A DNA stretch of 64,000 nucleotides, taken from IMG/VR virus record IMGVR_UViG_3300029893_000001, positions 124,001 to 188,000 of that record. One strand, 5' to 3'. Positions 2,312 to 20,977 of this stretch are shown here, one piece after another (position 1 is the first letter of the stretch; every line of letters begins with the position of its first letter). A program made the position numbers and the translations under genes. The notes under the pieces were generated by a model, which was not told the DNA's origin, did not search any database, and saw only the letters and a list, made by a program, of their open reading frames with translations.

Positions 2312-2366
2312 GTAAGATAGGTAAGCTGCGGTTATCGACTGTTGATAACCGCTACCTCGGAAAAGT

Positions 2367-2430
2367 GCGGCGACAGGTTTACATCGAGAGGTTACAGTTT
2401 GCGGATGTACTCCCGAATGGCATTCGCCGC
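2367..2430 (-). ncRNA. minimal Y RNA-like ncRNA (stem only)
   Basis: GCGGCGA-ATGC-CAT(T)CGGGAG-TACAT ... CTCTCG-ATG-TAAACCTG-TCGCCGC; matches the GNCGAAN(0-1)G motif. Confidence 0.65.
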
Positions 2431-2437
2431 GAAAGTT

Positions 2438-2480
2438 GCCGGTGGGCAGGAGCGCTGGGTAGCGTCCTTTCCCTTCGACC
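2438..2480 (-). ncRNA. possible fourth minimal Y RNA-like hairpin
   Basis: GGTCGAAGGG-AA-AGGA-CGCT-ACCC-AGCG-C-TCCT-G-CCC-A-CCGGC; GTCGAAGG fits GNCGAANG. Confidence 0.35.
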
Positions 2481-2594
2481 GAAATCAGGCGTCCGGCACA
2501 CCTTGGGACTCGTCTTTAAAATAGACACAGGCAGCGCAAGTCATTCTGCGTCACACCCGCGCACGGGTGTCTGTGAATGGACGTAGTTCTTAAA

Positions 2595-2727
2595 TTTGTG
2601 GACTGCTGGGATACCACGGCCATCTACCCAACCAGCCCCTAGCAACCACTAGATGGTACGTACGTTATTACGCCCGCACGCTGGCGGAGGGAGTATTGTT
2701 GGAGGGAACTCCCACAGAACCCACAAA
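2595..2727 (-). ncRNA. orphan structured RNA
   Basis: Closing helix TTTGTGG..CTG.GGGA/TCCC.GCAG.CCACAAA; internal GGGAGT/ACTCCC and CCATCTA/TAGATGG helices. Confidence 0.4.
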
Positions 2728-2876
2728 GTGACGACAGGATTTGTCAGGGACGCTTTTGAGGTGCGACCGTATCACTACAGTTGTGTCTACCAATTTCCAC
2801 CACAGCAGCCAAGTGGCTGCTGACGGGATTCGAACCCGCATGCACTTGTATGTAGTCCCGTGACAGCATTCGTCAC
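2728..2876 (-). ncRNA. YrlA-type Y RNA (Ro-binding stem plus circularly permuted tRNA mimic)
   Basis: GTGACGA-ATGC-TGTCA(C)GGGAC-TACAT stem encloses a T-arm GCGGGTTCGAATCCCGT, a looped acceptor CAGCAGCCA/TGGCTGCTG and a D-arm TGGTGGAAATTGGTAGACAC, in T-acceptor-D order. Confidence 0.8.
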
Positions 2877-2917
2877 GAATTTGGCTTTCCGTATTCAGTT
2901 GTCAATCAACCACCCCT

Positions 2918-2933
2918 AGTATCGGGAGGGTTC
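2918..2933 (-). promoter_or_regulatory. phage promoter-like motif GAACCCTCCCGATACT
   Basis: 1 of 10 copies; directly upstream of the Y RNA-like cluster. Confidence 0.7.
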
Positions 2934-3094
2934 GACAACTGGGTCGGGGTCAGCCCAGCGTCCCCTGCCGCTCCATCAGCGAGCAGGCGCCCTCGCGGGA
3001 ATGGCAATTATATCCATTCCCGAGGACGGTATCGCTAATGCTGGCAGGCAGGAGTCGCATGAGAGACCGTAGCGTAGCACGTGCCACAAGGACG

Positions 3095-3946
3095 TCAAGC
3101 ACTTTTCTCTGGGCGCTCTACCAGCTCCCACGGAGGGTGGGGCGAGACGAACGCTGAGGCCCCTTGGTGACCACCCCCACCGAACATCTCTGCAAGTTTG
3201 GCAGCGTCGAAGTTTCCGTTGGATCGTACAGAGTACTTGAACGTCCCGTTCGAGCGCTGAAACCAGCCCACAGCAAAGTAATTCGCCGGGGCTAGTTCAT
3301 TCAAAAGTGAGCTGATATTGATCCCAGAGGCATTCACTACAGGGACGTCATGGTAGCCCGCAAACTTAGCAAGCCTCACATTCTTCTTGCAGTCTGTGAT
3401 TGCAATGCGCTCTGCCCGCAAAACTGCCTCACCAACCGTAAGTACCGATGTCATGTTGTTCTCGATCTGAGAAGCCAGCCATGACCACGTCTGAAAATCC
3501 CCAAGAGGATAACTAAAGATGGCAGCGCTGACGATGTGGGAATTTGGCATGGTCCAACGCCAAATGTCCCGATCTTCAACATAGTCAACGAGCAAAGGTC
3601 TCTTCTGGCCTGGATGAAAGAAATCCCACGCCATACCAGCGCCACTACGATTCATGTCAAAGAGACAGAAGTCCAGACCGTGGCATCTAGCCTCATTTGT
3701 CTTATGGTGATCGATGACGGTGAGCTTTCGAGCCCTGGCCGCGTAATCAACCAACTCGTTGCGAGTTGGACAATAGTCTATGATGTAGACTTCTCGTCCA
3801 TCCACGTCGAAGACATCTGTAGGCCAATAGTTCGCAGGGACATATTCCGCAGCGCCTCCGAACTTGCGCCATGCTGCCCACGCGGCAGTCCATCCGTCAG
3901 CGCAGTCACCGTGGTATACAACCAAAATGTTCTTACGATCAGTCAT
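3095..3946 (-). CDS. DHH/DHHA1 family phosphoesterase
   Basis: YHGDCADG, IID, DHH, SGA and GGGGH motifs. Confidence 0.9.
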   Translation of the reverse strand: MTDRKNILVVYHGDCADGWTAAWAAWRKFGGAAEYVPANYWPTDVFDVDGREVYIIDYCPTRNELVDYAARARKLTVIDHHKTNEARCHGLDFCLFDMNRSGAGMAWDFFHPGQKRPLLVDYVEDRDIWRWTMPNSHIVSAAIFSYPLGDFQTWSWLASQIENNMTSVLTVGEAVLRAERIAITDCKKNVRLAKFAGYHDVPVVNASGINISSLLNELAPANYFAVGWFQRSNGTFKYSVRSNGNFDAAKLAEMFGGGGHQGASAFVSPHPPWELVERPEKSA

Positions 3947-4266
3947 GAACGACTCGATTCCTTCGACTCCAACAACTCCTCAACGACGCACCATCCTTCT
4001 ACCCACGAGACGTACTCATTCCAGGAAAACCCAAGGAATTCGTGCAATGGCTTTGTACTATTTGAGTTGTGCCAAGCGTCGATGGCCGTATCAAGCACTT
4101 CGTCCAAATCTTGACCCTCGAACTCTCCAGCCAACGCACGAGTTACGAAGCTACGAGAGCTAAAGTCGACTCGCGGGCTCCGCACCACAAACATGAGAAG
4201 CTTGAGAACTCTAGGAGTAATCCAAGACAGCATGACGTCCTCTTTAAAAAGAGGCGAGGCCAGCAT
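3943..4266 (-). CDS. hypothetical protein
   Basis: ORF whose stop overlaps the DHH start (ATGA); start uncertain. Confidence 0.6.
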   Translation of the reverse strand: MLASPLFKEDVMLSWITPRVLKLLMFVVRSPRVDFSSRSFVTRALAGEFEGQDLDEVLDTAIDAWHNSNSTKPLHEFLGFSWNEYVSWVEGWCVVEELLESKESSRS

Positions 4267-4344
4267 AGCCTTGCCGGCCCCGCCGAGTTTTGCTGTATTC
4301 TATGAATACGGCATCCTGTCCATTCTATCACACCAACGGCGTTT

Positions 4345-4728
4345 AATCTCGTGTATTAGATCTGAGTGTCTGCGTCATTCTGTTAGACCACCTCTCCGCA
4401 CGTAGCTCAATCCAGGAGGGGATTAGGGGAGGGGTCAAGATTGAGCTACGTGCGGAAAGGGCTGGATTCGCACCAGCATTTCAGACATGTCATCACGAGA
4501 ATTCGAGATGGTGATCGGACAAGACCTCCAAACTTAGGGAATAGCCTCAGCTTTACGTCTAAGTCCGAAGTAGCGCTGCCTCTTCCAGTTGGGCTACCTC
4601 CCCATACTCAGCGGGGAAGGAAGGATTCGAACCTCCACTGTAGCGTCTTCAGATCAGTTTGATTCTGAGTTTGGTCCCTACGGAAATCCCAAGGGAAACC
4701 CGAGTACAAGTCGGAACCCCGGGGAACT
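4345..4728 (-). ncRNA. ncRNA with two circularly permuted tRNA-like domains
   Basis: Domain 1 at 4564-4653 and domain 2 at about 4345-4503, each in T-arm / closed acceptor / D-arm order; G-U pairs only work on the minus strand; own promoter motif at 4736-4751. Confidence 0.75.
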
Positions 4729-4735
4729 GTAACCT

Positions 4736-4751
4736 ACTATCGACAGGGTTC
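4736..4751 (-). promoter_or_regulatory. phage promoter-like motif GAACCCTGTCGATAGT
   Basis: Repeat motif between the 246-aa gene stop and the ncRNA. Confidence 0.7.
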
Positions 4752-4778
4752 GCTGCCCTCAATAGTAGGCGTTAGCTC

Positions 4779-5519
4779 TTACTGGTTGCTCTCAGCAAAC
4801 ACGTAGCCAAAAAGGCTATCAGCAATCTGCTCGCGACGAATCTCGTACGAGTTCGCCTCTTCTCGCGCAAACTTAACTGCGTTTTGAAGCTTCGCAATGC
4901 GGGCCAAAAGGTCGTCCTTGCGATCCTGCGTGAGGGCGGCGGAATAGTGAATCGTTTTCCAGTATCCAACGACCACATCTTCCGAGACCTCCTTCACCTG
5001 AGCGGGATGCTCCTTAGTTGCCTCATAGAGAACAACCGGCTTGATGGTCTTCTTTGTCTTCGCCGACTCAGAGGGCTGAGTGCGGTAAGCAGACTGCCCC
5101 GGATCCCAATCCCACGTTTGTGAAGGGTCAAGAACGGGAAGCTTCGACACGAAAGTGTGCAAGTCTACGAGCTGCTTCTCTAGAAAGAGCAAGTAGGTTA
5201 CCGGAACGTCGGACACAAGGACTTTTCCGTCTACAACGACGTTCGCAGTAGCCTTGAGGTTTGCCTTGTCCTTCGTGAAGGTGATGTCAAACATCTCGGC
5301 CAAACACGTCTGCACGTCATTCAGAACGTTCTTTGCACGTAGCTGAATCTTCTGCGACTCGGGAGGAAAGCGTTCGCCATCCTCGTTGGTTGGCGAGTAA
5401 GTACGCTCGCGTCCTTCATACAGAGAAGGTACCTGAGACTTCTTGTGGAGGTCGGTTAGAGACCGGTTCGAAGATGCCTTCACGCCCTTCTCAATTGCAA
5501 GGATCTGGTTGAGTTTCAT
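4779..5519 (-). CDS. conserved uncharacterised coiled-coil protein (MKLNQILAIEKGVK..; recalled as DUF7873-like)
   Basis: 246 aa, good RBS (GGAG), helical N- and C-termini around a beta-rich insert. The family name is from memory only. Confidence 0.8.
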   Translation of the reverse strand: MKLNQILAIEKGVKASSNRSLTDLHKKSQVPSLYEGRERTYSPTNEDGERFPPESQKIQLRAKNVLNDVQTCLAEMFDITFTKDKANLKATANVVVDGKVLVSDVPVTYLLFLEKQLVDLHTFVSKLPVLDPSQTWDWDPGQSAYRTQPSESAKTKKTIKPVVLYEATKEHPAQVKEVSEDVVVGYWKTIHYSAALTQDRKDDLLARIAKLQNAVKFAREEANSYEIRREQIADSLFGYVFAESNQ

Positions 5520-5848: not shown

Positions 5849-6142
5849 TCAGGAGTTGTCAACAACTCCGATGATCTCTTCCTCAGCGAGGACAAGATGC
5901 TTCTTGCCTCCAAGCTCAATTTCCGTCCCTGCATACTTTGGCAGAAGTACTACATCGCCTCTCTTAACGTGAGGTTCGATGAGTCTGCCATGTTCGGTCA
6001 CCCGACCTGGTCCTACAGCAACCACAGTGCCACGATTCGACTTTTCCTGTGCCATCTGCGGGATGATTAGACCGCTCTCTGTCCTTTCCTGAACTTCGCT
6101 GAGTAGAACAAGGACTCGATCGCCTAACGGACGAAAATTCAT
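5849..6142 (-). CDS. groES: co-chaperonin GroES
   Basis: PLGDRVLV, TESGLIIP, VVAVGPG, VKRGDVVL, KYAGTEI motifs. Confidence 0.97.
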   Translation of the reverse strand: MNFRPLGDRVLVLLSEVQERTESGLIIPQMAQEKSNRGTVVAVGPGRVTEHGRLIEPHVKRGDVVLLPKYAGTEIELGGKKHLVLAEEEIIGVVDNS

Positions 6143-6643: not shown

Positions 6644-7041
6644 TGGACCCGCTGGTATCGAAACCAGGTCCTCGAACGCCTAACTGACTCCGCTACGTGT
6701 GTAGTCTCATTTACCCGCAGATTACGCGCTGCAGGAAGCCGAGACAAGCACCGCGAGGGGCACAACGGCCCTCCACCACTAACCCTTTAGACTTAGCTCG
6801 GTCGGGTCAGAAACCGAGGTGCAACCCGAGTCGATGAGCCGCAGAGGACTATCGGGTGTCCTCCCCTGCGACACCTCACGCCGCGAGGGGCAGAGGCTCG
6901 GCGGTGCCATTGTCGTTAGCAACGACATTGCCGAAGAGGGAAACTACGTTGTTCGCAGTTCTTCATGGGCTTTTAACGAGGCCAGCCCACCTCGACACGC
7001 AGAATCAGGTCGGTTCGTCCGAGTCGAAGCCTTTCGGGCCC
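6644..7041 (-). ncRNA. ssrA: tmRNA; tag reading frame 6956-6876 encodes ANNVVSLFGNVVANDNGTAEPLPLAA*
   Basis: Acceptor GGGCCCG/CGGGTCC-A with the G3:U70 pair, GGCTTCGAC, PK1 (GAGG-TGGGC..CCTC..GCCCA), GACTACACACGTAG, tag ending in LAA. Confidence 0.92.
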
Positions 7042-8274: not shown

Positions 8275-8991
8275 TCAACTTTGCTTGCGCTCTAACAACG
8301 CTAGCAAACCTCTATATGCAGCGGAGATTTGCTTGAACTTTTCTGCTGCATCTAATTCTTTACAGCGATCGGGGTGGTACCGAAAAGCCGCTCTTCTGTA
8401 CGCGGCCTTCAGCTCCCTAATCGTCACTCCAGCCCGAACGTTCAAAACCTTATACCACTCTATGGTATTAGGGTCAATTCGCGATTTGCGGGCGGCCTTT
8501 CGGCGTTCCGACTTCTTCTCCCTCTTTTTGGCTTCCCACCATTTCTTAAGACGCTGCCAATCTTGTTCTTCTATTGAGTAGAAATCCCGTCCGCGACGAG
8601 AGTCCAACGGGTCCCAGTTCCAGTAGGAACTAAAGTCCTCCGGAGACTCCTCAAATTCAACAAAGGGGCTTCGAAAGCTCTGAGACGGATTCGGACGTCG
8701 GAACGACGGTTCTCTCTCACTTTCCTCGTCAGTACAAGGCGATCGTCTTGGAGTAAAGGGCCTAATCTTTAGGGCCCACACCATTTTCGCTTCAGGAAGT
8801 AGAATCTCGTAGGGATCGGGGTTGAGCCGATTCATCACCTTGAACCAGCGACCCCGAACCTCCAAAATTAAGGAACGAACTGGCTCTCCAGACGCAGCAG
8901 ACTCCAGGAATACGATATCGCCTACAGTTAGGCGGTGTGCAGGAATTCGTACAACTCCTGAAGGAAGAGAACCGGGAAAAGGCGGAAGCAC
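8275..8991 (-). CDS. DnaJ-domain protein (C-terminal J domain)
   Basis: WYKVLNV...LKAAYRRAAFRYHPD...EKFKQISAAY. Confidence 0.88.
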   Translation of the reverse strand: MLPPFPGSLPSGVVRIPAHRLTVGDIVFLESAASGEPVRSLILEVRGRWFKVMNRLNPDPYEILLPEAKMVWALKIRPFTPRRSPCTDEESEREPSFRRPNPSQSFRSPFVEFEESPEDFSSYWNWDPLDSRRGRDFYSIEEQDWQRLKKWWEAKKREKKSERRKAARKSRIDPNTIEWYKVLNVRAGVTIRELKAAYRRAAFRYHPDRCKELDAAEKFKQISAAYRGLLALLERKQS

Positions 8992-11857: not shown

Positions 11858-11873
11858 ACTATCGAGAGGGTTC
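11858..11873 (-). promoter_or_regulatory. phage promoter-like motif GAACCCTCTCGATAGT
   Basis: Copy of the repeat motif upstream of a gene start. Confidence 0.7.
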
Positions 11874-13101: not shown

Positions 13102-13117
13102 ACTATCGACAGGGTTC
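13102..13117 (-). promoter_or_regulatory. phage promoter-like motif GAACCCTGTCGATAGT
   Basis: Motif copy 10 nt upstream of ATG 13091. Confidence 0.7.
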
Positions 13118-13616
13118 ACTTCTTACGCTTTCGAAGCACTTTCTCAATAAAGCGCCGCTTATGCCGACTAAGGTGGTCTATCATCAACTTACCGTCCAGG
13201 TGCTCTCCTTCATGCTGAACGCATTGAGATGCAAGTCCTGTGTAGTGAAAGTTGAAGGCATTCCCGTTTCGGTCTAAAGCCTTCCCGGTCACCCATTCAT
13301 ACCGTGGAATAGACTCCACGATTCCCGGAAACGACAAACACCCCTCGTCGCGCATCAAGACCAACTTCTCAGGAGTTTGAAGAACTTCGTGGTTAACCAG
13401 GACTTCCAGTTTCGACTGGTCTGAAGATGTGTCCATTACGAATACACGAAGAGGTATTCCCACCTGAGTGGCTGCCAGCCCAGCTCCGCGATGAGCGTAC
13501 ATGGTCTCAGCCATGTCGTCCACGATACGCTGAAAATCAGCCCCAAACTCACTCACTGGGCTGGCAACGACGCGCAGCTCGGGATCGGGCCAAATCCTAA
13601 TTCGAAGCCGTGTCAT
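13116..13616 (-). CDS. def: peptide deformylase
   Basis: GAGLAATQ, EGCLS, QHEGEHLDG motifs. Confidence 0.95.
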   Translation of the reverse strand: MTRLRIRIWPDPELRVVASPVSEFGADFQRIVDDMAETMYAHRGAGLAATQVGIPLRVFVMDTSSDQSKLEVLVNHEVLQTPEKLVLMRDEGCLSFPGIVESIPRYEWVTGKALDRNGNAFNFHYTGLASQCVQHEGEHLDGKLMIDHLSRHKRRFIEKVLRKRKK

Positions 13617-13672
13617 ACCCATTAAACGAAAAGGGCCGAGCCTCACCGCTCGGCCCTTTTCGTTTAATGGGT
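13617..13672. repeat. perfect 25-bp inverted repeat (hairpin/terminator)
   Basis: 13617-13641 is the reverse complement of 13648-13672. Confidence 0.85.
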
Positions 13673-14422
13673 TCAGCTCTTCGAAGGAGTGTCGGAAGAC
13701 GTCTGATTATCTGTATTAGGTGTCACGGACGACTTCAGACGCTCCGCAAAGTCAACATCCTTTAGATCGTCGACATGTGCAGAGCAGAAGAAGTCATAGG
13801 ACGCATCCTGAGCATCCAGACCACGTACAGCACCAAGCCCACGACTCACCACGTTATACGCCGCGCCGATCCCCTTCGACGAAGCAGTGTAGCCGATGGC
13901 GTTCGACGAACGGATTCCGATAGCCGAAGACTCGGCAAACGCGTCAACATTTGCACCCAAGTAGAGGAAGTTCCACTTATAGACCTCCTCCTGATGCTTG
14001 ATCATTTCGGCGATCTTTGCCTTGCTCCACTCTCGCGAGGAGTTCTCCTCCCCATCCGTGATCACGAGGAACAAAACCTTCCCAGGTCTCTTGTCCTCGG
14101 GGAGCCGCTGAAGATCGTTTTTGAGATCCGTGATACACTTCCCCATTGCGTCCAAAAGAGCCGTTCCACCTCCAGGACGGTATGAGATAGAGGTGAGAGG
14201 CTCCACAGAGCTGATATCCAGCATCGAACAAAGAATCTGGTACCCTGGATACCGTCCATGAGAACTGGAGAATTTGCATACGGTCATCGTGGCTTTGCCG
14301 TCGATGGCTTGCTGCTCCTCTAGGAACGAGTTGAATCCGCCCCTCGTGTCTTCTGCCAAGGAACCCATCGAACCGGATTCGTCCAGAAGAACAGTAATGT
14401 GGGTGTAATTTGCGTCAGTCAT
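13673..14422 (-). CDS. von Willebrand factor A domain protein
   Basis: LLDESGSM MIDAS, TALLDA, ITDGEENSS. Confidence 0.9.
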   Translation of the reverse strand: MTDANYTHITVLLDESGSMGSLAEDTRGGFNSFLEEQQAIDGKATMTVCKFSSSHGRYPGYQILCSMLDISSVEPLTSISYRPGGGTALLDAMGKCITDLKNDLQRLPEDKRPGKVLFLVITDGEENSSREWSKAKIAEMIKHQEEVYKWNFLYLGANVDAFAESSAIGIRSSNAIGYTASSKGIGAAYNVVSRGLGAVRGLDAQDASYDFFCSAHVDDLKDVDFAERLKSSVTPNTDNQTSSDTPSKS

Positions 14423-14439
14423 CTTTCTTTTGCCTTCCT

Positions 14440-15117
14440 CTAGCCCAAAGCTAGGTTGGAAACCTCTACGTTGGTCCGGTCCCCGTCCACGTAGACGATC
14501 GGGGTGGAGTCGCTCAACCGACTTCCCTCCTTTACAGAAAGAAGGTAACGAGCGTATTCCATCTCCCTCTTAGAGGAGGCTCCAGAATGCATGAGTAGAA
14601 CAGTCCAAGCCCTTTTCTTATGGTCCCACCACGGACCACGAAGAAGGTACTGGTCGAAGGGAGGCTCTGCCGCCCTCGTCCGCTTCACATTCTGCGCCGA
14701 CTCCAACCGAACCTTGGGCCAAAGGCTACGGTGTTTGGGGCAGCGCACATAATCTGGCCTCGTATTTACTAAGACCAAAACATCGACGTCACAATGAACG
14801 CAGGGGCGTACGACCTTAGCTGTTCGCGGCACAGCCTTCAAAACACAACTCGGACTACAATAGTCCTTGGGCGTGTTTCGCTTTGTCATCGCTTGAATGG
14901 CATTCCCACAAACAACGCAGCATCGGGCTAGCCCCTGAAGAGCAGAAATCTGGGTGCGCTTGGCTGCAAGCAACTCATCATGCAGAGCCTTAAAGTACGC
15001 GTCGACGCAAGTCGAAGAGCAAAACTCTAGGTCCTCGTCCGAAGTTTCGAAGGAAATATTGCAGCACTTACAAGTGCGCGAAACCTGCTCAGCCAATGGT
15101 CCAAACCTTTCTTCCAA
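14440..15117 (-). CDS. Cys-rich zinc-ribbon protein with a degenerate HNH_3-like C-terminus
   Basis: CxxC...FCS repeats; IVYVDGDRTNVEVSNL lacks the catalytic His; start moved outside the tRNA. Confidence 0.6.
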   Translation of the reverse strand: MEERFGPLAEQVSRTCKCCNISFETSDEDLEFCSSTCVDAYFKALHDELLAAKRTQISALQGLARCCVVCGNAIQAMTKRNTPKDYCSPSCVLKAVPRTAKVVRPCVHCDVDVLVLVNTRPDYVRCPKHRSLWPKVRLESAQNVKRTRAAEPPFDQYLLRGPWWDHKKRAWTVLLMHSGASSKREMEYARYLLSVKEGSRLSDSTPIVYVDGDRTNVEVSNLALG

Positions 15118-15190
15118 TATGCCCGGTCGGACTCGAACCGACAACGTCCCGGTTATGAGCCGGAGGCTCTAACCATTGAGCTACGGGCAT
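15118..15190 (-). tRNA. tRNA with CAT anticodon (probably Ile2, otherwise Met)
   Basis: ATGCCCG/CGGGCAT acceptor; CCGGCTCATAACCGG arm resembles Ile2; no initiator GGG/CCC. Confidence 0.85.
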
Positions 15191-15227
15191 ATGTATTCTG
15201 TGGGCACGTAGCCCACCATCACTGTTC

Positions 15228-15255
15228 TAAGATAGAGAACCACCAAGGAAAGTCA
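15228..15255 (-). promoter_or_regulatory. sigma70-like promoter for the tRNA
   Basis: TTGACT-16 nt-TATCTT. Confidence 0.4.
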
Positions 15256-15349
15256 AGAACTACCCTTGATATTTTGGGTTGTGAGGTTCCTCACTTATCG
15301 ATCGCAAGCCAAAACACTGTATTGGCTAGGGACCAACAAGGAGGTTCGA

Positions 15350-15517
15350 GTGGAGAAGATCAGCCCGGAGGATGCTCGCAAGCGACTGGAGAACCGGCGA
15401 GCACGGCTCGCACGCCTAATCGAGCTAGACGCACCCCCGTTCCTCATCGAGAAGGAGCGCGAACTCATCGCCGACGCGATCTATGCCCTGGAAACGGGGC
15501 AGCTCCGTCAACGGTGA
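15350..15517 (+). CDS. small helical protein, the only plus-strand gene
   Basis: AAGGAGG RBS then GTG; 55 aa; followed by a hairpin. Confidence 0.7.
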   Translation: MEKISPEDARKRLENRRARLARLIELDAPPFLIEKERELIADAIYALETGQLRQR

Positions 15518-15520
15518 CAT

Positions 15521-15536
15521 AGTATCGGCAGGGTTC
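15521..15536 (-). promoter_or_regulatory. phage promoter-like motif GAACCCTGCCGATACT
   Basis: Motif copy pointing antisense into the plus-strand gene. Confidence 0.65.
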
Positions 15537-15572
15537 AAGCCCTGGCGTCCCCAAACAGGGACGTCAGGGCTT
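15537..15572. terminator. bidirectional terminator-like hairpin
   Basis: AAGCCCTGGCGTCCC/GGGACGTCAGGGCTT between convergent genes. Confidence 0.7.
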
Positions 15573-15574
15573 GT

Positions 15575-16603
15575 TTACCTGTCCCACTCGTTGAACTCGA
15601 CCTTCTTCGTCATCCAGTGTTCGTCTGTCTGCACGTGATGACTCCGCACGTATTTGCCTACGACGTGCCGAAACTCACTATAACGAAACGAGTCGGCCAC
15701 CCTAACTACGTGGCCTTCGCACTGGTTTCCTTGGAATTCAGCTTCATACAAGCTGCGAATCTGGGTCTCATCCCATTCTCCATCATAGAGTACAGGAACG
15801 GTTTTTAGACCAAGCATATCGCAGTAACTGACTGTGTCGTCCCAAGACAGACACACATTCCACTCGTTCCAGATGCTAAAGACCTGAAAGAAGTGAGGGA
15901 GATTCTTGTAGCGAATCGAATGTACCGCCGATAGATTCTCGCCGCAAATCCTCCAGCGCTCAGGAATCTCGTGCGAAAACTGCTGCCAAAACGCCTTCAT
16001 CATCCCCCTAGACTCATGGGTCGTGTAGCTCAAAGCCCGAGCATGGATGAAGTCGCGGTACAATGATGTGTTCTCTCCGTCCATCTTGACGGTTGCAATT
16101 ACCCGGCGCCCCTCAAAACCTCTCGTAGACGACATAATCTTGTCGTCGCTAGTAGCTCCGGGGGACCAAGGGAGATGAAAGGTTCTCGGGTACTTCACAA
16201 TATGTGTGAAGTCCATCAATACAGGAGCGAGAATCGACTGAACAGACTCCTCATGAAACAGCTCCCCTGGAGTCCTTCGAGACGATTTTTCGTCCAGGTA
16301 TGGGTTGCCCCACTTGTCATAACGACCAGAAGAATCAAGATGGGGAGGAAGTAGAATCTTCTCGATTTTGCAGAGACGCCGAAGCTCCTCACATGAAACT
16401 AGCGTCTGCTCAGCCTTGTAGTGACACGGCTCGCATACCGAAGCCCCGTTGTCAAGATAGTAACCACCATCTGGCCAAAGGCGCCGTTCAATGATGTGAT
16501 GAGCATCGACCGCAGGAGCCCCACAGACGACGCACTTGTACGAATCCCGAGAAAATACAGCCTCTCGGAATTCATCTCGGGTAAGAAGTCTGTGGATTGA
16601 CAT
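15575..16603 (-). CDS. RNA ligase (ATP-dependent, Rnl2-like family) with an N-terminal HNH domain
   Basis: KYPRTFHLPWSPG..DDK, KMDGEN, ICGEN, EGHVVR, KYVR; N-terminal CVVC..DAHH..CEPCH. Confidence 0.85.
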   Translation of the reverse strand: MSIHRLLTRDEFREAVFSRDSYKCVVCGAPAVDAHHIIERRLWPDGGYYLDNGASVCEPCHYKAEQTLVSCEELRRLCKIEKILLPPHLDSSGRYDKWGNPYLDEKSSRRTPGELFHEESVQSILAPVLMDFTHIVKYPRTFHLPWSPGATSDDKIMSSTRGFEGRRVIATVKMDGENTSLYRDFIHARALSYTTHESRGMMKAFWQQFSHEIPERWRICGENLSAVHSIRYKNLPHFFQVFSIWNEWNVCLSWDDTVSYCDMLGLKTVPVLYDGEWDETQIRSLYEAEFQGNQCEGHVVRVADSFRYSEFRHVVGKYVRSHHVQTDEHWMTKKVEFNEWDR

Positions 16604-16606
16604 TGT

Positions 16607-16936
16607 TCACCCCTCAACGTCCTCGTGATAACAGACGTACTCGTCAAATTCAGGAGTCCCCAGAAGAAAGGTATCCCTAATCCCAGCGCTCCAGTGTTCG
16701 ATCACAACTAAGTCCGGGTAAGAAATACGGGGAATCCGCAGCTCAGCCCAACGAAACCGAAGAAACAGCCGAATTTTCTCACAAAACGTGAGGGGCTGCG
16801 TATATGGCCTAGGACGGCGTAGTACGAGTCTCATACCCCGTCTTCCTTCCGTCAACCAGTAGTAATCGTCGCCTTGCTGTAAGTCCACCCCGTTCAAAGA
16901 AACGTAGATGTCTCTTTCCGAAAGAAGGCTGTTCAC
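16607..16936 (-). CDS. hypothetical protein
   Basis: Coupled ORF. Confidence 0.6.
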   Translation of the reverse strand: MNSLLSERDIYVSLNGVDLQQGDDYYWLTEGRRGMRLVLRRPRPYTQPLTFCEKIRLFLRFRWAELRIPRISYPDLVVIEHWSAGIRDTFLLGTPEFDEYVCYHEDVEG

Positions 16937-17238
16937 GAGGCCTTTCCCTTGTACGACTGAGGCCCAGGTACATACGTAATCCCTGGCAAAACGCCATCTG
17001 CAGGAAGAAATCCATGCTGGATGTAGTAGAGCACCTGAGCTTTGCCATAGTGCTCATTCACGATTCGAAGCCAAGATCGGGCTGTCTGATCGTCCCGATA
17101 ACGGCCCTCGCGACGAGAGTACATTGAGTACACAACATTGCAGGTCTCGACGCATTTCTCGTACTCCTCTTGCATCCTAGCTTCCAGCCCGGCGATGCAG
17201 CACTCCAAAACTGCAAGTCTACTTTCAAGGCTTTTCAT
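16933..17238 (-). CDS. hypothetical protein
   Basis: Coupled ORF. Confidence 0.6.
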   Translation of the reverse strand: MKSLESRLAVLECCIAGLEARMQEEYEKCVETCNVVYSMYSRREGRYRDDQTARSWLRIVNEHYGKAQVLYYIQHGFLPADGVLPGITYVPGPQSYKGKAS

Positions 17239-18179
17239 ACAGCCCTCAAGTATTCCTCAACAATCGACACACAAAGCTCGTCTAGCTTGTGGACAGGAGG
17301 TGTATGACGAAGAGTAGAAGTCGCGTAGAGAGTGTCAGCCTGCTTTTCTAGCTTGTCTGCTTCTTCCAAGAGTCGCTCATACGTCCAAGCCCCGTTCCGA
17401 ATTGCCAAAAGCTCGTCAGCATCGGGGCGCTTGACCAGGACACCCTTTCCTTCAAGGATTTCAACGCACATGCGCATTAGACGCATTAAGTGCATGCCGT
17501 GCTTGGTATCGTAACCATACTTCGCCTCCAACGCAGCACGGTCCTTATTCCGGGTCGCCTCCCAATTCTTGTACTGCTTCCAATGCTGGAGGGCTGCAGC
17601 ATATTGCTTTTCTCGCTGAATGGCGGTCATGACTTCTCCACCAAAGGAGTACCCAGACGCCGAAAGCTCGTCAAAAGCTCCCATGATGGAGCCGCTGACT
17701 ACTTTGTTACCCTCATCCGGAAGCCCAAAGTCCGCCCGACTCGGCTTTTCCCTTGGAGGGTTTAGCAACCAACTCCGGTGTGTCCGAATCCTCTTGAGCT
17801 GGGCATGGGCGTAACCGGAAAACGTGAATTTCGCTTTCTTTGAAAGAAAGAGATCCTTGGCCTCCAACAGCCTCTCACCAAGCTTATTCACGAAAACATG
17901 GTCAGACTCATGAGTGTGCAGCACCTCGATGATATTAGGGTTGCAGTCGGCCGCCAGCTTGATGAACTTTCGAATGTCGAACACGACCTTGTCATGAGGG
18001 TGGCCGTTGGACACCAGCTCTTCGGACTGCTCAAAGTTAAAGGCGTACCCCAGGAAATACTGCTTCGGGGGAATAGCCACACCTTTGTAGTCGGTATCCG
18101 AAGTGGGCGTGCTAGTGCCATACGCACGGCTGCCGTGTACGGTTAGGTAGATCGTGTGCTCTTTGATGTTGAATTGCAT
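17235..18179 (-). CDS. DNA polymerase beta-superfamily nucleotidyltransferase (RlaP-like)
   Basis: GSRAYGTSTPTSDTDYKG, NPNIIE, YDTKHGMHLMRL, LLAIRNG. Confidence 0.88.
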   Translation of the reverse strand: MQFNIKEHTIYLTVHGSRAYGTSTPTSDTDYKGVAIPPKQYFLGYAFNFEQSEELVSNGHPHDKVVFDIRKFIKLAADCNPNIIEVLHTHESDHVFVNKLGERLLEAKDLFLSKKAKFTFSGYAHAQLKRIRTHRSWLLNPPREKPSRADFGLPDEGNKVVSGSIMGAFDELSASGYSFGGEVMTAIQREKQYAAALQHWKQYKNWEATRNKDRAALEAKYGYDTKHGMHLMRLMRMCVEILEGKGVLVKRPDADELLAIRNGAWTYERLLEEADKLEKQADTLYATSTLRHTPPVHKLDELCVSIVEEYLRAV

Positions 18180-18186
18180 GTAAGCC

Positions 18187-18651
18187 TCAGAAATCGTAGA
18201 CAGTCACATCAAGCCCCTTCAAGGTGTTCAAAACGATTGGCTCCATGCGGTCCCACGAACCACCAGCTAACCCACAACCCATCCGAGGCATGTGAATCGT
18301 AGCGTCCAACCTCTTGGCGTACTTAGCAACCGACCGCAGCCCAGTCTCGATTGCAGAGTAGCGGATGGGGCTGGGATTAGCCGGGCCTAGAAGACCCTTC
18401 TGGCCAATTAGATTGGCTACAGTGATCTGTTCATCGTGCTCGGATTCAACCGAAACGAATTGAACGTCCCCTAACTTAAGCTGACCCCGTGTAAGAGAGT
18501 CAACGTAAGCCGCCTCGGGCTCGGGCCACCGTCGCGACAGAGCCAAAACGAATCCGGCGCCCCAGGCGCCGAGGTCGTTGCAACAGTGCACGATGATCTT
18601 ATGTCCCTTACCCCGAGGATAAGTAGCGTCACCCTTCACGTAGCGAATCAT
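18187..18651 (-). CDS. macro domain (Appr-1-p processing) protein
   Basis: YVKGDAT, HCCNDLGAWGAGF, MPRMGCGLAGGSW. Confidence 0.92.
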   Translation of the reverse strand: MIRYVKGDATYPRGKGHKIIVHCCNDLGAWGAGFVLALSRRWPEPEAAYVDSLTRGQLKLGDVQFVSVESEHDEQITVANLIGQKGLLGPANPSPIRYSAIETGLRSVAKYAKRLDATIHMPRMGCGLAGGSWDRMEPIVLNTLKGLDVTVYDF

Positions 18652-19069
18652 CCTTGAGTTCTTCTTTCTCTGCTTGGGCTTCGAGCTGAACAATTAGAGA
18701 GGTGAGGTTTTGAATCACAGCCTGAACCTCGGCCACAGTGATCTTCACGACCTTGTCAGCATCCACAGTCCTTTCAATCGTGTGCCGGATAGGAGTCTCG
18801 CTAAACAGCGGAGCGTCCCTTACACGCCGAATTACCAAAAGCGGAGGTAACTCGTCTCCAGGCTTGAAGCCTCGGGCCAACAAAGAGGGATTGTTGAACA
18901 ACTCATGGTCCATCAAGATCCTGGAGTGAAACTCTCGAATCTCGTAGATGTGAGGACGATCTCCGTCAGTGACAAGACAGACAAAATCCCCCTGACGAAT
19001 AGAGGGATCCCAATGTTTTCCCGCTAATGCCTGCGGCGGCCTCTCCAGTCTCTTACGCCTTCGACGCAT
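18629..19069 (-). CDS. hypothetical protein
   Basis: ORF; start trimmed to limit overlap. Confidence 0.6.
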   Translation of the reverse strand: MRRRRKRLERPPQALAGKHWDPSIRQGDFVCLVTDGDRPHIYEIREFHSRILMDHELFNNPSLLARGFKPGDELPPLLVIRRVRDAPLFSETPIRHTIERTVDADKVVKITVAEVQAVIQNLTSLIVQLEAQAEKEELKDDSLREG

Positions 19070-19640
19070 CAACGCCCCGATAAATGCATTGAACCGAAAG
19101 ACCGATGACATTCTTCGCCATATCGGCTCGAATCCGGAAAGGCTGTACAGAAAAGGACGAAAGCTCATCCTTTAGGTCACGTACCACACGTGCTGCAACT
19201 TCCTCTCGTGCCTTGTCGGCCGTAACAGTCCCTGCTCCAGGAGAAATTCGAGCAGTATGAATCCTACCCACCAAGACGAACTTCACCAAAAAGTGACCAC
19301 TGGAGGCAACCTTCGACTCTTTAGAGTGAAAGACGAGCCCAGTAACTTCTTCTAGTATGGGAGCAATCAACCTACTCTTGTCATCCTCTGGGACTGGAGC
19401 CGGGCTGCGCGTCTGGGGTACGTCGGGCGACGTAGGAATTAGCGTGAAGGTATACCGACGAACCTTATTACGGGTCATGGAACGCTTGAGCCGTAATACC
19501 TTTTTCATCGTCGGATGTGAAGAACTATACCCGTGAACGCGGAGAGCCGCCTGGATCGCGAGCAGACAACGTTCTGCATCCGTCTCCATCGTGTAGCTAG
19601 AAAACGTTAGGTTGCCAAAAGGCCTATCCTCCGCAGTCAT
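19053..19640 (-). CDS. hypothetical protein, local paralogue family (GY..H..M..L..L..YTF domain)
   Basis: Shares a ~45-aa N-terminal motif with three neighbours. Confidence 0.7.
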   Translation of the reverse strand: MTAEDRPFGNLTFSSYTMETDAERCLLAIQAALRVHGYSSSHPTMKKVLRLKRSMTRNKVRRYTFTLIPTSPDVPQTRSPAPVPEDDKSRLIAPILEEVTGLVFHSKESKVASSGHFLVKFVLVGRIHTARISPGAGTVTADKAREEVAARVVRDLKDELSSFSVQPFRIRADMAKNVIGLSVQCIYRGVDASKA

Positions 19641-19677
19641 TGCTGTCCCTCAATCCTAATGGCGGCTCGGCAGCGCT

Positions 19678-20130
19678 TTACTTAGCCGGCTGTGCCTGCT
19701 TCAGTTCCTGAACGTATTCGATGATCGCTTGTCGAACACGATTGTCCGTCAACCTCTTGGCATTTGTAGCCACAACAAAATGGCTTCCCTTGTGGGCAAC
19801 AATCTTCGTCTTCCACCCATCGATCTTAGAAAAGACAGACGTGATGACAGTAGAATCGAATTCGTTTCGTGTCCTGAAAGCCCGCACGATGGGTGCATCA
19901 GAAGAATGATCGGTCGCAGTGTCTGCAGCCTTGGTGGAAACCTCGTCCTGGTCGGGGTCGTTCTTCTGAGAACGATCCGTAGTCCCAAACGTGAATCCAT
20001 CATTTTTGAGTGCCTTCAACAGGCGCCGTGCCGTCTTCATAACCTGAGAGTCAGACGGGAAGCCATCTTCCTGAAGCTGATTCTCTAAGTCTCGAAAGTG
20101 ACGCTCTACGTCATTTGCATTCTCAGCCAT
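19678..20130 (-). CDS. hypothetical protein, local paralogue family
   Basis: ERHFRDLENQLQEDGF...RRLLKALKNDGFTF. Confidence 0.7.
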   Translation of the reverse strand: MAENANDVERHFRDLENQLQEDGFPSDSQVMKTARRLLKALKNDGFTFGTTDRSQKNDPDQDEVSTKAADTATDHSSDAPIVRAFRTRNEFDSTVITSVFSKIDGWKTKIVAHKGSHFVVATNAKRLTDNRVRQAIIEYVQELKQAQPAK

Positions 20131-20308
20131 TGCTCGACTCCATCTGTTCAACGGGCCTGAAAGTGTATCCATTCGCCCGCAACGCCTTACGAAGGCGAGC
20201 AAGCTTTTGCAGGGCTGCATGGCTCCTGTCATAGCCTTGCTTCAACATCAGACGACGAAGGCGTTCGAAATGCTTTTCAGTAGCAGTTTGGTAAGTCATG
20301 TTCGTCAC
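20123..20308 (-). CDS. hypothetical protein, local paralogue family (domain only)
   Basis: EKHFERLRRLMLKQGY...ARLRKALRANGYTF. Confidence 0.7.
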   Translation of the reverse strand: MTNMTYQTATEKHFERLRRLMLKQGYDRSHAALQKLARLRKALRANGYTFRPVEQMESSNG

Positions 20309-20496
20309 CTCGTAAGGCCAGAAATGCGCTCTGCTTGAGCCACCAATCGGTCCAAAACAGACTTCTTAGTAGCTACGCTCATGTCCATCAACAACTTGTC
20401 GGAGCTGCGATTCTCCAACTGTGAAAGTACATTGGAAAGAGACTCGAAAAACTTCAAGTCTTCTCCAACAGGACCACCACGGCAACACGTACTCAT
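20305..20496 (-). CDS. hypothetical protein
   Basis: Coupled ORF. Confidence 0.55.
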   Translation of the reverse strand: MSTCCRGGPVGEDLKFFESLSNVLSQLENRSSDKLLMDMSVATKKSVLDRLVAQAERISGLTR

Positions 20497-20912
20497 TTTG
20501 CCTCCGACGTTGGAGGCAACCTCATCTCTCGAAACAGAGAGACCAGCTCCGAAACACTCAAGTCAGTTCGTCGGTATCCGCGACCGGTCTCGTCTCGTCG
20601 CCGCTCAGCAAGCTCAGCATCGTCCAAAAGACGAGACAAGAAAGGCATATACTCACCTGTGAGGTATAGCTGGTCTTCGATTTCTGCAAGCTCCGGAACT
20701 TTGTCAGCAGCCTCATCAATGAGGTCAACAATTCGATTCTTGACTTCTTTGCTCAACAAAAGAGGCCTACGATCGATATAAGGAACAAATTGGACGTTCC
20801 CACAAATGCACGCAGTACACGCCAAAGAAACCTTACAGCATTGGCTACACAACCAATGATGGCGCTGCTCTACGTTCGAAACCGGCAAAGTTAGATCACT
20901 GAGGTCGAACAA
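20493..20912 (-). CDS. hypothetical zinc-binding protein
   Basis: Cys cluster; AAGGAGG RBS. Confidence 0.65.
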   Translation of the reverse strand: MFDLSDLTLPVSNVEQRHHWLCSQCCKVSLACTACICGNVQFVPYIDRRPLLLSKEVKNRIVDLIDEAADKVPELAEIEDQLYLTGEYMPFLSRLLDDAELAERRRDETGRGYRRTDLSVSELVSLFREMRLPPTSEAK

Positions 20913-20938
20913 GGGTCCTCCTTTAGGGTCAGCATTTT

Positions 20939-20954: not shown

Positions 20955-20977
20955 GCCGTCTCCAAAAGCAAAAGCAA

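What the first reader, a model, noticed from the sequence alone, without database searches (positions are those of the whole stretch)
4345..5519. Candidate new ribonucleoprotein system: coiled-coil protein gene plus an ncRNA made of two circularly permuted tRNA mimics
SEEN: right after the 246-aa gene, and behind its own promoter motif (4736-4751), the minus strand folds into two tRNA-like domains in permuted order (T-arm, acceptor stem closed by a loop, D-arm), with no anticodon loop and no free CCA end. Domain 1 (4653->4564): CGCT-ACAGT-GGAGG[TTCGAAT]CCTTC-CTTCCCCG[CTGAGTA]TGGGGAGG-TA-GCCC[AACTGGAA]GAGGC-AGCG, mounted on TCTGAAG/CTTCGGA and TAGGGA/TCCCTA helices. Domain 2 (~4503->4345): TGTCTG-AAAT-GCTGG[TGCGAAT]CCAGC, a 22-bp extended acceptor arm, TG-GTC[TAACAGAAT]GAC-G-CAGACA, closed by TCTCGTG/CACGAGA. 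In domain 2 the T-loop has G at position 55 and the D-loop has AG in place of GG, which looks like a compensated elbow. KNOWN: this permuted topology is that of bacterial YrlA Y RNAs, but here there is no GNCGAANG Ro60 stem. INFERENCE: the adjacent uncharacterised protein is the partner, and the complex displays tRNA elbows as decoys or tethers, for example against tRNA-targeting defences. From memory and unverified, homologues of this protein in other bacteria and phages are followed by similar sequence.
Basis: partly seen in the sequence, partly recalled or inferred. Interest (0 to 1): 0.92.

Follow-up and report, generated by a model that had tools for sequence, protein, structure and literature searches.

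The report
Twin tRNA-mimic RNA with partner protein
A conserved protein of unknown function (DUF7873) is followed, in hundreds of bacteria and phages, by a large non-coding RNA carrying two rearranged tRNA look-alikes; neither Rfam nor the searched literature describes the pair, which is probably a new RNA-protein particle that plugs into the cell's tRNA machinery.

Summary
The ORF at 4779-5519(-) is a full-length DUF7873 protein. The ~485 nt after it (about 4730 to 4245, minus strand) is a structured RNA gene with a phage promoter-like motif and an intrinsic terminator.

The RNA has two circularly permuted tRNA-like heads (T-arm, 7-bp acceptor stem closed by a loop, U8, D-arm) on helical stalks.

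In 145 non-identical homologous loci, 95% have a T-arm hairpin within 500 nt downstream on the same strand. On 122 aligned heads the T, acceptor and D stems are 98-100% paired with heavy compensatory change.

Head 1 copies the tRNA-Leu D-arm. The acceptor loops begin with a discriminator-like base and often an encoded CCA, which suggests RNase P and CCA processing.

There is no Rfam family and no Ro60 gene. The Ro60-binding motif is not enriched. The protein has no known fold, and I found no paper on it.

Physical binding and the decoy function remain untested. The best reading is a Ro60/YrlA-like particle with a new protein partner.

The parts
4779..5519 (-). DUF7873 protein gene (246 aa)
   Evidence: Pfam PF25283, E 8e-101, full length. 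7498 homologues and 2648 clusters at 50% identity, almost all about 245 aa with no fusions. AF2 pLDDT 90.5 with no PDB fold match.
4733..4769 (-). Hairpin after the ORF containing the phage promoter-like motif GAACCCTGTCGATAGT (4751-4736)
   Evidence: The motif occurs 10 times on the minus strand only, against 0.37 expected. It lies after terminators and before RBS/ATG. No sigma-70 consensus is present.
4245..4730 (-). Whole ncRNA gene (about 485 nt). The 5' end is inferred from the promoter-like motif and the 3' end from the terminator.
   Evidence: The homologous RNA lies downstream of DUF7873 in about 95% of loci.
4642..4680 (-). 5' strand of stalk 1, with hexamer-periodic NNCUSA repeats (TAGGGA, CUCA, CUGA, TCTGAAG, CGCT)
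   Evidence: It pairs with 4577-4535. The repeats and their complements are seen in all clades. Cognate flanks pair better than permuted partners.
4578..4641 (-). Head 1: permuted tRNA-Leu-like domain (variable ACAGT, T-arm, 7-bp acceptor stem closed by loop GCUGAGUAU, U8-A9, 3-bp D-stem with 11-nt loop)
   Evidence: R1 77 bits. Covariation on 122 heads. Tertiary nucleotides conserved. The D-arm motif is otherwise found in real tRNA-Leu genes.
4535..4577 (-). 3' strand of stalk 1 (AGCG, CTTCGGA, UUAG, UGAG, TCCCTA)
   Evidence: Complement of 4680-4642. In other clades a CUSA change on one strand is matched on the other, as in L010 and L020.
4482..4519 (-). 5' strands of the core enclosing head 2: UCC, CACCA (closing helix), AUCUCGAAU loop, TCTCGTG, TGTCTG
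   Evidence: The homologous helices covary (26 of 28 pairs have compensatory changes).
4373..4481 (-). Head 2: permuted class-I tRNA-like domain (T-arm with G55, 22-bp extended acceptor arm, U8-G9, D-arm with A18)
   Evidence: R1 30.5 bits. Found by the MFE fold. G55 with non-G18 covariation. The equivalent domain of L015 scores 35.4 bits on Rfam YrlA.
4314..4372 (-). 3' strands of the core: CAGACA, CACGAGA, near-invariant UUAAACG loop (4346-4340), UGGUG, GGA
Evidence: Conserved from the phage to Streptomyces, Acidobacteria and Chloroflexi.
4245..4284 (-). Intrinsic terminator (13-bp GC-rich hairpin plus U tract)
   Evidence: A GC-rich terminator hairpin ends the RNA in the bacterial loci too.

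Best explanation
The ORF at 4779-5519(-) and the RNA gene at about 4730-4245(-) form a self-contained two-gene module that occurs in many bacteria and large phages.

Shown:
- The RNA is a conserved structured ncRNA with two stalks, each capped by a circularly permuted tRNA-like head.
- Each head keeps the full set of nucleotides that build the tRNA L-shape.
- Head 1 carries a tRNA-Leu D-arm. Head 2 is a generic class-I mimic.
- A non-tRNA core (repeat-bearing stalk, closing helix, UUAAACG/AUCGA internal loop) is conserved at least as well as the heads.

Inferred:
- The protein binds this core and makes a stable particle, in the way Ro60 binds the stem of YrlA Y RNAs.
- The two heads are handled as tRNAs by host enzymes. 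RNase P and the 3'-end/CCA machinery open the acceptor loops, and the elbows and acceptor ends then tether or occupy tRNA-binding factors.
- The particle serves tRNA or translation-linked RNA quality control. Large phages carry their own copy next to their tRNAs, tmRNA, chaperone and RNA-repair genes to keep that function running during infection.
For: Linkage:
- 138 of 145 non-identical loci have a T-arm hairpin within 500 nt downstream on the gene's strand, and 114 have two. This compares with 21 in the upstream control and 2 on the opposite strand.
- CM hits lie at fixed distance and strand, including isolated phages Racecar, Ronaldo and phiRSL1.
- No other protein is a conserved neighbour in 166 loci.

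Structure:
- T stem 99.7%, acceptor 98.6% and D stem 98% paired. Covariation score is 0.725 against 0.18 for shuffles and at most 0.14 for slid partners.
- U8 in 122/122, A14, G18G19, A21, T54-U55-C56 and A58 are conserved. The 15-48 pair covaries as A-U or G-C.
- All 12 scorable G55 heads have A or C at position 18, whereas U55 goes with GG in 209 of 215.
- The core helices covary.

tRNA-Leu mimicry:
- The head-1 D-arm motif falls in ARAGORN-called tRNA-Leu genes in about 75 of 95 other viral matches.

Processing:
- The acceptor stem is 7 bp in essentially all parsed heads.
- The next base is A in 81% of head 1 and U or G in head 2.
- N-CCA is encoded in 43/121 and 28/116 loops, against about 1.6% expected. 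The base before the stem is most often U.
- M. smegmatis YrlA, the one YrlA with a 7-bp acceptor stem, is cut by RNase P and receives CCA in vivo (PMC4201824).

Core as the protein site:
- Head 1 was replaced by a plain hairpin at least twice in Streptomyces, while the stalk, core, head 2 and the protein stayed intact.

Context in the window:
- tRNA-Arg, GroES, tmRNA, DnaJ, peptide deformylase, two RNA ligases, RlaP and a Macro-domain protein.
Against: - No direct evidence that the protein touches the RNA.
- The protein is near neutral (median pI 6.5) and has only two short basic patches.
- It carries invariant acidic and His residues that would also fit an enzyme.
- Permuted heads also occur without DUF7873 nearby: window 2766-2859, and 11 viral loci such as L176. 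The heads therefore do not strictly need this protein.
- In this window head 2 has a fully paired 22-bp arm with no single-stranded discriminator or CCA, and head 1 has G-C-U-G rather than N-CCA. Processing is less obvious here than in most relatives.
- The biological role (quality control) is argued by analogy and gene neighbourhood only.
Confidence: 0.45

Rival explanations
1. tRNA decoy or sponge. The heads, with or without the protein, soak up enzymes that attack or modify tRNA, such as toxins or defence nucleases acting on the acceptor end, elbow or class-II tRNAs. This would protect real tRNAs, chiefly during phage infection. It is the reader's proposal.
For: - Faithful elbow and acceptor mimicry, with tRNA-Leu specificity in head 1.
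- Frequent location in phage tRNA islands and beside RNA-repair genes.
- Extra stand-alone heads in phage tRNA arrays.
Against: - There is no anticodon arm, so anticodon nucleases, the best-known tRNA-targeting defences, would not be decoyed.
- The module sits in chromosomes of Streptomyces, myxobacteria and Chloroflexi in ordinary, non-mobile contexts, and follows taxonomy within families.
- It is rare on plasmids.
- No PADLOC hit.
- The protein is far more conserved (over 50% identity across phyla) than arms-race genes usually are.
Confidence: 0.2
2. Split, chargeable tRNA-like cofactor. After cleavage and CCA completion, head 1 is leucylated by LeuRS, which in E. coli needs A73 and tertiary structure but not the anticodon (established knowledge, cited from memory). 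DUF7873 would be an enzyme that uses the tethered aminoacyl or CCA ends.
For: - A73-like base in 81% of head 1, A15-U48, G18G19 and the tRNA-Leu D-arm.
- Encoded CCA.
- Invariant Asp, Glu, His and Lys residues and a neutral pI in the protein.
- Two acceptor ends held on one scaffold.
Against: - The discriminator is G in this window and its closest relatives.
- Head 1 is dispensable in several Streptomyces.
- Head 2 resembles many isotypes whose synthetases need an anticodon.
- No catalytic fold is recognisable.
Confidence: 0.12
3. The RNA works without the protein. The adjacency would reflect co-transcription (a 3'-UTR-derived stable RNA) or cis control of DUF7873 expression rather than a particle.
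For: - In bacteria the RNA starts within about 30-60 nt of the stop codon, with hairpins and no visible promoter.
- Heads exist elsewhere without the gene.
- L058 has three RNA copies, none directly abutting the gene.
Against: - The linkage survives from Actinomycetota to phages of Proteobacteria at 30-33% protein identity. That is hard to explain without a shared function.
- In this phage the RNA has its own promoter-like motif and terminator.
- The downstream genes vary, so it is not a leader.
Confidence: 0.1
4. It is an ordinary YrlA-type Y RNA that serves a Ro60 (Rsr) protein encoded elsewhere in the genome.
For: - Same permuted topology.
- Rfam YrlA gives sub-threshold full-length matches: 16.2 bits in the window and 35.4 bits, E 3.5e-6, on L015 head 2.
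Against: - The scores are far below the gathering score of 69 bits.
- GNCGAAN0-1G occurs in 47 loci against 38 after shuffling, at inconsistent positions.
- No TROVE protein among the scanned ORFs of the window or in the Pfam-annotated bacterial loci.
- The constant neighbour is DUF7873.
Confidence: 0.07
5. It is decayed or tandem tRNA genes read across a gene boundary, that is, an artefact.
For: The model R1 does give such artefacts on adjacent real tRNAs (window 56494-56593 and 22446-22540; L085).
Against: - No tRNA is called at these sites in the window or in 14 bacterial loci.
- There are no anticodon arms.
- The two strands of each acceptor stem covary with each other.
- The order and the core are conserved across phyla.
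Confidence: 0.01

Closest known systems
YrlA-type bacterial Y RNAs with Ro60/Rsr (Rfam RF02553; Chen et al. 2014, PMC4201824)
   Same: - Permuted tRNA-like domain in the order T-arm, acceptor-like stem-loop, D-arm, mounted on a stem formed by distal sequences.
- tRNA tertiary nucleotides conserved.
- Found in bacteria and phages.
- A 7-bp acceptor stem as in M. smegmatis YrlA, which is cut by RNase P and given CCA.
- Weak but full-length CM similarity.
   Different: - Two heads in one 330-480-nt RNA, plus a distinct conserved core.
- No GNCGAAN0-1G Ro60 site.
- No Ro60 gene nearby.
- The constant partner gene is DUF7873, a protein of a different, unknown fold.
- Head 1 is specifically tRNA-Leu-like.
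Two-piece tmRNA from circularly permuted ssrA genes, with SmpB
   Same: - A permuted gene order in which the T-arm and 3' acceptor strand (with CCA) precede the 5' acceptor strand.
- Maturation by excising the intervening loop.
- A dedicated small protein partner.
- Also carried by phages.
   Different: - No tag reading frame or pseudoknots.
- No G3:U70 alanine identity (3 of 122).
- A full D-arm is present.
- Two heads.
- The window already has a standard tmRNA at 6644-7041.
Permuted tRNA genes (Cyanidioschyzon merolae and some other algae and archaea)
   Same: The 3' half is encoded before the 5' half, with the acceptor ends joined by a short linker that is later removed.
   Different: Those genes yield complete tRNAs with an anticodon loop through a circular intermediate. 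Here the anticodon arm is replaced by long stalks that continue into the rest of the RNA.
Other tRNA mimics: viral 3' tRNA-like structures, mascRNA
   Same: They use the tRNA shape to engage RNase P, the CCA-adding enzyme or synthetases.
   Different: Different topology (not permuted), a single domain, eukaryotic or plant-virus context, and no dedicated partner gene.

Membership tests
YrlA Y RNA / Ro60 system | Permuted tRNA-like module (T stem-loop, acceptor-like stem-loop, D stem-loop) with tRNA tertiary nucleotides | tested here: met
YrlA Y RNA / Ro60 system | Reaches the Rfam RF02553 gathering score (69 bits) | tested here: not met
   16.2 bits in the window. 35.4 and 19.8 bits in L015. 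No gathering-level hit in 14 loci.
YrlA Y RNA / Ro60 system | Ro60-binding helix with the conserved GNCGAAN0-1G motif | tested here: not met
   The motif is in 47 of 166 downstream regions against 38 after shuffling, at inconsistent positions. It is absent from the window RNA.
YrlA Y RNA / Ro60 system | Encoded within a few kb of a Ro60 (TROVE-domain) gene | tested here: not met
   No TROVE hit among the window ORFs scanned, which included every ORF of 350 aa or more. None in the Pfam-annotated bacterial and phage loci. Ro60 elsewhere in those genomes was not examined.
YrlA Y RNA / Ro60 system | RNA is bound by Ro60 in vivo | not testable with these tools
   Needs immunoprecipitation.
Canonical tRNA | Cloverleaf in standard order with an anticodon arm, detected by ARAGORN or Rfam RF00005 | tested here: not met
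   No call at 4245-4730 or in 14 bacterial loci. The order is permuted and the anticodon arm is replaced by stalks.
Two-piece (permuted) tmRNA | Tag-peptide reading frame with resume codon, G3:U70 alanine identity, detection by ARAGORN or Rfam tmRNA models | tested here: not met
   The only tmRNA call is at 6644-7041. The G3:U70 configuration occurs in 3 of 122 heads. I saw no conserved frame in the linker when I compared the window with L002 by eye; this was not tested systematically.
Type III toxin-antitoxin (ToxIN-like) | Tandem array of short identical RNA repeats upstream of an endoribonuclease toxin gene | tested here: not met
   The RNA lies downstream and is not a tandem array of identical units. 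No PADLOC hit.
Pfam DUF7873 (protein) | Full-length match above the gathering score | tested here: met
   337 bits against a cut-off of 27, residues 2-242.

The most novel reading that the evidence does not exclude
The module is a new class of processed, split double-tRNA particle. RNase P and 3'-end enzymes cut both acceptor loops, leaving three base-paired RNA pieces with two CCA ends on one scaffold. Head 1 is charged by LeuRS. DUF7873 is an enzyme of a new fold that acts on or with these tethered ends, for example in aminoacyl transfer or surveillance of tRNA ends. This would be a tRNA-derived cofactor system unrelated to Ro60 or tmRNA.
Probability: 0.12. Interest if true: 0.95.

Novelty: new variant of a known kind. 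Interest (0 to 1): 0.85.

Why it matters
- DUF7873 is a large family: 7498 sequences, at least 586 species genomes, 380 viral stretches and 50 isolated phage records. It is strongly conserved and nothing is known about it.
- Showing that it always travels with a twin tRNA-mimic RNA gives it a first, directly testable functional handle.
- It extends the Y-RNA idea (a protein-binding stem plus a tRNA-like effector module) to a second, unrelated protein partner. This suggests that tRNA mimicry is a general way for bacteria and phages to couple proteins to the tRNA machinery.
- It also supplies a well-defined new RNA family for Rfam and for genome annotation. Small ORFs are currently called over it in phage records, for example Ronaldo gp124 and gp125.
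- Culturable systems are available for experiments: Gordonia, Arthrobacter and Ralstonia phages, Streptomyces and Myxococcus.

Tried and rejected
- Rfam at gathering and E-value thresholds gave only sub-threshold YrlA matches plus chance miRNA hits on the long hairpin.
- PHROGs, NCBIfam, PADLOC and PDB sequence search gave nothing for the protein.
- Foldseek against PDB and BFVD, and the ESM Atlas, found no meaningful fold relative.
- The exhaustive profile search found only more standalone proteins of about 245 aa.
- Megablast against phage genomes found no close relative of the window.
- Seven literature searches (DUF7873, PF25283, YrlA plus Streptomyces, tRNA-like plus phage or anti-defence, permuted or two-piece, T-loop plus Actinobacteria) found no description of this pair.
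- A conserved-neighbour search found none. The SNF2/SWIM genes next to one locus are not syntenic elsewhere.
- I considered that the RNA's hexamer repeats mimic the gene's first codons (AAG-CUG-AAC-CAG). I dropped this because codon choice and repeat sequence do not co-vary.
- A sigma-70 promoter before the RNA was not found.
- RNAalifold on the segment alignment did not recover stalk 1. Support for it is limited to direct complementarity, individual compensations and a modest cognate-versus-permuted energy gap.
- The head-2 D-arm is not isotype-specific.
Full report
**Where the window comes from**

The window is part of a 392-kb IMG/VR viral contig. All genes lie on the minus strand. ARAGORN tRNAs and a tmRNA. 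The window also encodes GroES, a DnaJ-domain protein, peptide deformylase, two RNA ligases, RlaP, a Macro-domain protein, a DHH/DHHA1 phosphoesterase, DNA polymerase A, gyrase A and B and a clamp-loader subunit. This is the content of a very large phage.

**The observation**

Domain 1:
- Variable-like ACAGT at 4641-4637.
- T-arm at 4636-4620.
- A 7-bp acceptor-like stem (4619-4613 with 4603-4597) closed by 9 nt.
- TA, then a D-arm at 4594-4578.
- The domain sits on a stalk built from 4680-4642 and 4577-4535.

Domain 2:
- T-arm at 4477-4461 with loop TGCGAAT.
- A 22-bp arm at 4460-4391.
- TG, then a D-arm at 4388-4374.
- The domain is closed by TGTCTG/CAGACA and TCTCGTG/CACGAGA.

The region folds better than its shuffles (z = -4.8). 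The single-sequence MFE fold recovers domain 2 but not domain 1.

**The protein**

- The ORF is a full-length member of Pfam DUF7873, E 8e-101.
- It has 7498 homologues in the 5.8-billion-protein set, at 52-56% identity to proteins of Streptomyces, Nonomuraea, Kitasatospora, myxobacteria and Chloroflexi.
- There are 2648 clusters at 50% identity. Nearly all are about 245 aa and unfused.
- PHROGs, NCBIfam, PADLOC and PDB sequences give nothing.
- An AlphaFold model is confident (pLDDT 90.5). It shows four long helices and long beta-hairpins.
- The model has no significant match in PDB or BFVD or in the ESM Atlas outside its own family.
- Median pI is 6.5, with two short basic patches. Invariant residues include several Asp, Glu, His and Lys.

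**The link between gene and RNA**

I fetched 80 species genomes, 80 viral contigs, several metagenome contigs and three isolated phages.

| Region scanned (145 non-identical loci) | Loci with a T-arm-like hairpin |
|---|---|
| 500 nt downstream, same strand, at least one | 138 |
| 500 nt downstream, same strand, at least two | 114 |
| 500 nt upstream (control) | 21 |
| Downstream, opposite strand | 2 |

These counts are; the first sight of the pattern was.

- I built a covariance model (R1) from 46 domain-1 sequences. It finds domain 1 at 55-91 bits and domain 2 at 20-55 bits, at fixed spacing, in nearly every locus.
- The same holds for Arthrobacter phage Racecar, Gordonia phage Ronaldo and Ralstonia phage phiRSL1, the last at 33% protein identity.
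- In those phage records the region is unannotated or covered by small hypothetical ORFs.
- No other protein is a conserved neighbour.
- ARAGORN and Rfam call nothing in 14 bacterial loci.

**Structure and covariation**

On 122 aligned heads:
- The T stem is 99.7% paired, the acceptor stem 98.6% and the D stem 98%.
- 18 of 19 pairs show changes on both sides.
- The covariation score is 0.725, against 0.18 in shuffles and at most 0.14 when partners are slid.

This alignment was fitted to the model, which favours the structure. The margin is nonetheless very large, and the raw parses show the same pattern.

The tRNA tertiary set is conserved:
- U8 in 122/122, plus A14, G18G19, A21, T54-U55-C56 and A58.
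- The 15-48 pair covaries: A-U in 107 heads and G-C in 6.

| T-loop position 55 | D-loop positions 18-19 |
|---|---|
| G (13 heads) | CG in 7, AG in 5, one not scorable, GG in none |
| U | GG in 209 of 215 scorable heads |

- A helix pairs the linker (consensus CGCCGG, and GCC) with the 3' tail (CCGGCG, and GGC). It encloses domain 2.
- Between this helix and the outer stem of domain 2 lies an internal loop with the near-invariant sequences AUCGA and UUAAACG.
- These helices covary: 26 of 28 pairs have compensatory changes.
- In the window they are CACCA 4513-4509 with UGGUG 4335-4331, and UUAAACG at 4346-4340.
- The RNA ends at a terminator, 4284-4253 plus a U tract. The next ORF probably starts at ATG 4233 behind AGAGGA, not at 4266.
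- The 5' leader and the linker carry hexamer-periodic NNCUSA repeats (CUGA or CUCA). They pair with each other to form stalk 1.
- Support for stalk 1 is weaker. It rests on direct complementarity, clade-specific compensation (CUCA with UGAG in L010 and L020), and a modest energy advantage of cognate over permuted flanks.

**What the heads imitate**

- The head-1 D-arm has a 3-bp stem and an 11-nt loop ending GGNAGA. In other viral contigs this motif lies inside ARAGORN-called tRNA-Leu genes in about 75 of 95 matches. Most of the remainder are DUF7873 RNAs or stand-alone permuted heads.
- The head-2 D-arm is shared by many class-I isotypes.
- In Racecar and Ronaldo the head-1 acceptor sequence differs from the phages' own tRNA-Leu genes. 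It is a mimic, not a recent copy.

**Signs of tRNA-type maturation**

| Feature | Head 1 | Head 2 |
|---|---|---|
| Acceptor stem length | 7 bp | 7 bp |
| Next base (discriminator position) | A in 98 of 121 | U in 65, G in 50 of 116 |
| N-CCA encoded at start of loop (about 1.6% expected) | 43 of 121 | 28 of 116 |
| Base before the 5' strand is U | 43% | 59% |

- Position 74 is C in 101 of 122 heads.
- Chen et al. 2014 report that M. smegmatis YrlA is the one YrlA with a 7-bp acceptor stem. It is cleaved by RNase P in vitro and carries CCA in vivo (PMC4201824).
- I therefore infer that these loops are opened in the same way. This would leave base-paired pieces with tRNA-like ends.
- In this window the case is weaker. 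Head 1 has G-C-U-G after the stem, and head 2 continues as a perfect 22-bp helix.

**Which part matters to the protein**

- Eight Streptomyces loci have a plain hairpin in place of head 1. They keep the stalk, the core, head 2 and an almost unchanged protein.
- On the protein tree these loci are scattered within one Streptomyces subclade, which needs at least two losses.
- The constant partner of the protein is therefore the non-tRNA core plus head 2. This is why I place the protein on the core, but that placement is an inference.
- The tree follows taxonomy within Streptomycetaceae and Streptosporangiaceae. It mixes Chloroflexi, Acidobacteria, Armatimonadetes and myxobacteria elsewhere, which indicates some horizontal transfer.
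- The gene is rare on plasmids: 4 of 72,556 records.

**Expression in the phage**

- It typically follows a terminator and precedes an RBS and start codon.
- That behaviour fits a phage-specific promoter. No sigma-70 consensus is present.
- In bacteria the RNA begins 30-60 nt after the stop codon, behind one or two GC-rich hairpins, with no visible promoter. Co-transcription followed by processing is likely there, but this is inferred.

**Comparison with known systems**

The closest known system is the YrlA Y RNA with Ro60.
- Same: the topology and the tRNA mimicry. The Rfam YrlA model also gives full-length sub-threshold matches (16 bits in the window; 35 bits, E 3.5e-6, on head 2 of L015).
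- Membership fails on three tested features. The gathering score is not reached. The GNCGAAN0-1G motif is not enriched. No TROVE gene is present in the window ORFs or in the annotated loci.

Two-piece tmRNA shares the permuted acceptor arrangement and loop excision. It differs in having a tag frame and G3:U70 identity, both absent here.

Tandem or decayed tRNAs are excluded.

Searches of Rfam 15 and of the paper library found no description of this RNA or of DUF7873. Subscription-only literature could not be checked.

**Verdict**

- The gene-RNA partnership is strongly supported by comparative genomics.
- Formation of a particle, processing of the loops and any decoy or quality-control role are inferences of decreasing strength.
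- I file it as a new variant of the Y-RNA kind of tRNA-mimic particle, with a new protein partner and a twin-head architecture.
- It is of high interest because it is widespread, was not found in Rfam or the searched literature, and can be tested directly.

Noticed in passing
window 2766-2859 (-), within the non-coding stretch 2312-3094: A third permuted tRNA-Leu-like head (R1 35.7 bits, E 4.5e-13). It has a 7-bp acceptor stem, the D-arm GUG-GAAAUUGGUAGA-CAC and an ACUACA/UGUAGU stem. It is not next to DUF7873, and no tRNA is called there. A copy of the promoter-like motif lies at 2933-2918, about 60 nt upstream, so this is probably a second independent ncRNA gene.
   Followed up: partly
window 2918-2933, 4736-4751, 11858-11873, 13102-13117, 15521-15536, 20939-20954, 24178-24193, 34229-34244, 57011-57026, 60105-60120 (all minus strand): A 16-nt motif GAACCCTNNCGATAGT occurs 10 times against 0.37 expected. 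It sits after terminators and shortly before RBS/ATG. It is a candidate phage-specific promoter or other transcription signal.
   Followed up: partly
window 13116-24216: A cluster of translation and RNA-repair genes:
- peptide deformylase (13116-13646)
- HNH plus RNA ligase (15575-16603)
- RlaP (17235-18179)
- Macro domain (18187-18693)
- a second RNA ligase with an OB fold (23047-24216)

Nearby are a phage tmRNA (6644-7041), GroES (5849-6142) and a DnaJ-domain protein (8275-8991).
   Followed up: partly
window 3095-3946 (-) and L085 9244-10086: A DHH/DHHA1 phosphoesterase (NrnA-like, weak hits) directly follows the RNA in this phage and in its 70%-identical relatives. It does not do so in bacteria. 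It could act on RNA ends or nanoRNA.
   Followed up: no
window 3943-4266 (-): The mechanical ORF start at 4266 lies inside the RNA's terminator hairpin. The in-frame ATG at 4233, behind AGAGGA, is the more likely start.
   Followed up: partly
L007, L016, L026, L030, L055, L060, L071, L080 (Streptomyces): Variants of the RNA in which tRNA-like head 1 is replaced by a simple hairpin, while the stalk, core and head 2 are kept. They are scattered in the protein tree, which needs at least two losses.
   Followed up: yes
L176 3528-3900; L058 650-1052 and 6193-7019; also L175, L183, L225, L250: - Permuted tRNA-like heads occur without a detectable DUF7873 gene. L176 has an array of three heads separated by a repeated CCGGTGCG...ATACTTC unit.
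- The Ktedonobacterales locus L058 carries three pairs of heads around one DUF7873 gene.
- Together these suggest a wider, unexplored population of permuted tRNA mimics in phage tRNA islands.
   Followed up: partly
window 4642-4680 and equivalent leaders in L002-L085: The leader consists of about four hexamer-periodic repeats of the form NNCU(G/C)A. Complementary repeats lie in the linker. The regular spacing looks like a binding array for an oligomeric protein, but this was not tested.
   Followed up: no
L168 (Gordonia phage Ronaldo) 3720-4189: The annotated small ORFs gp124 and gp125 overlie the conserved RNA and are probably not genes.
   Followed up: no
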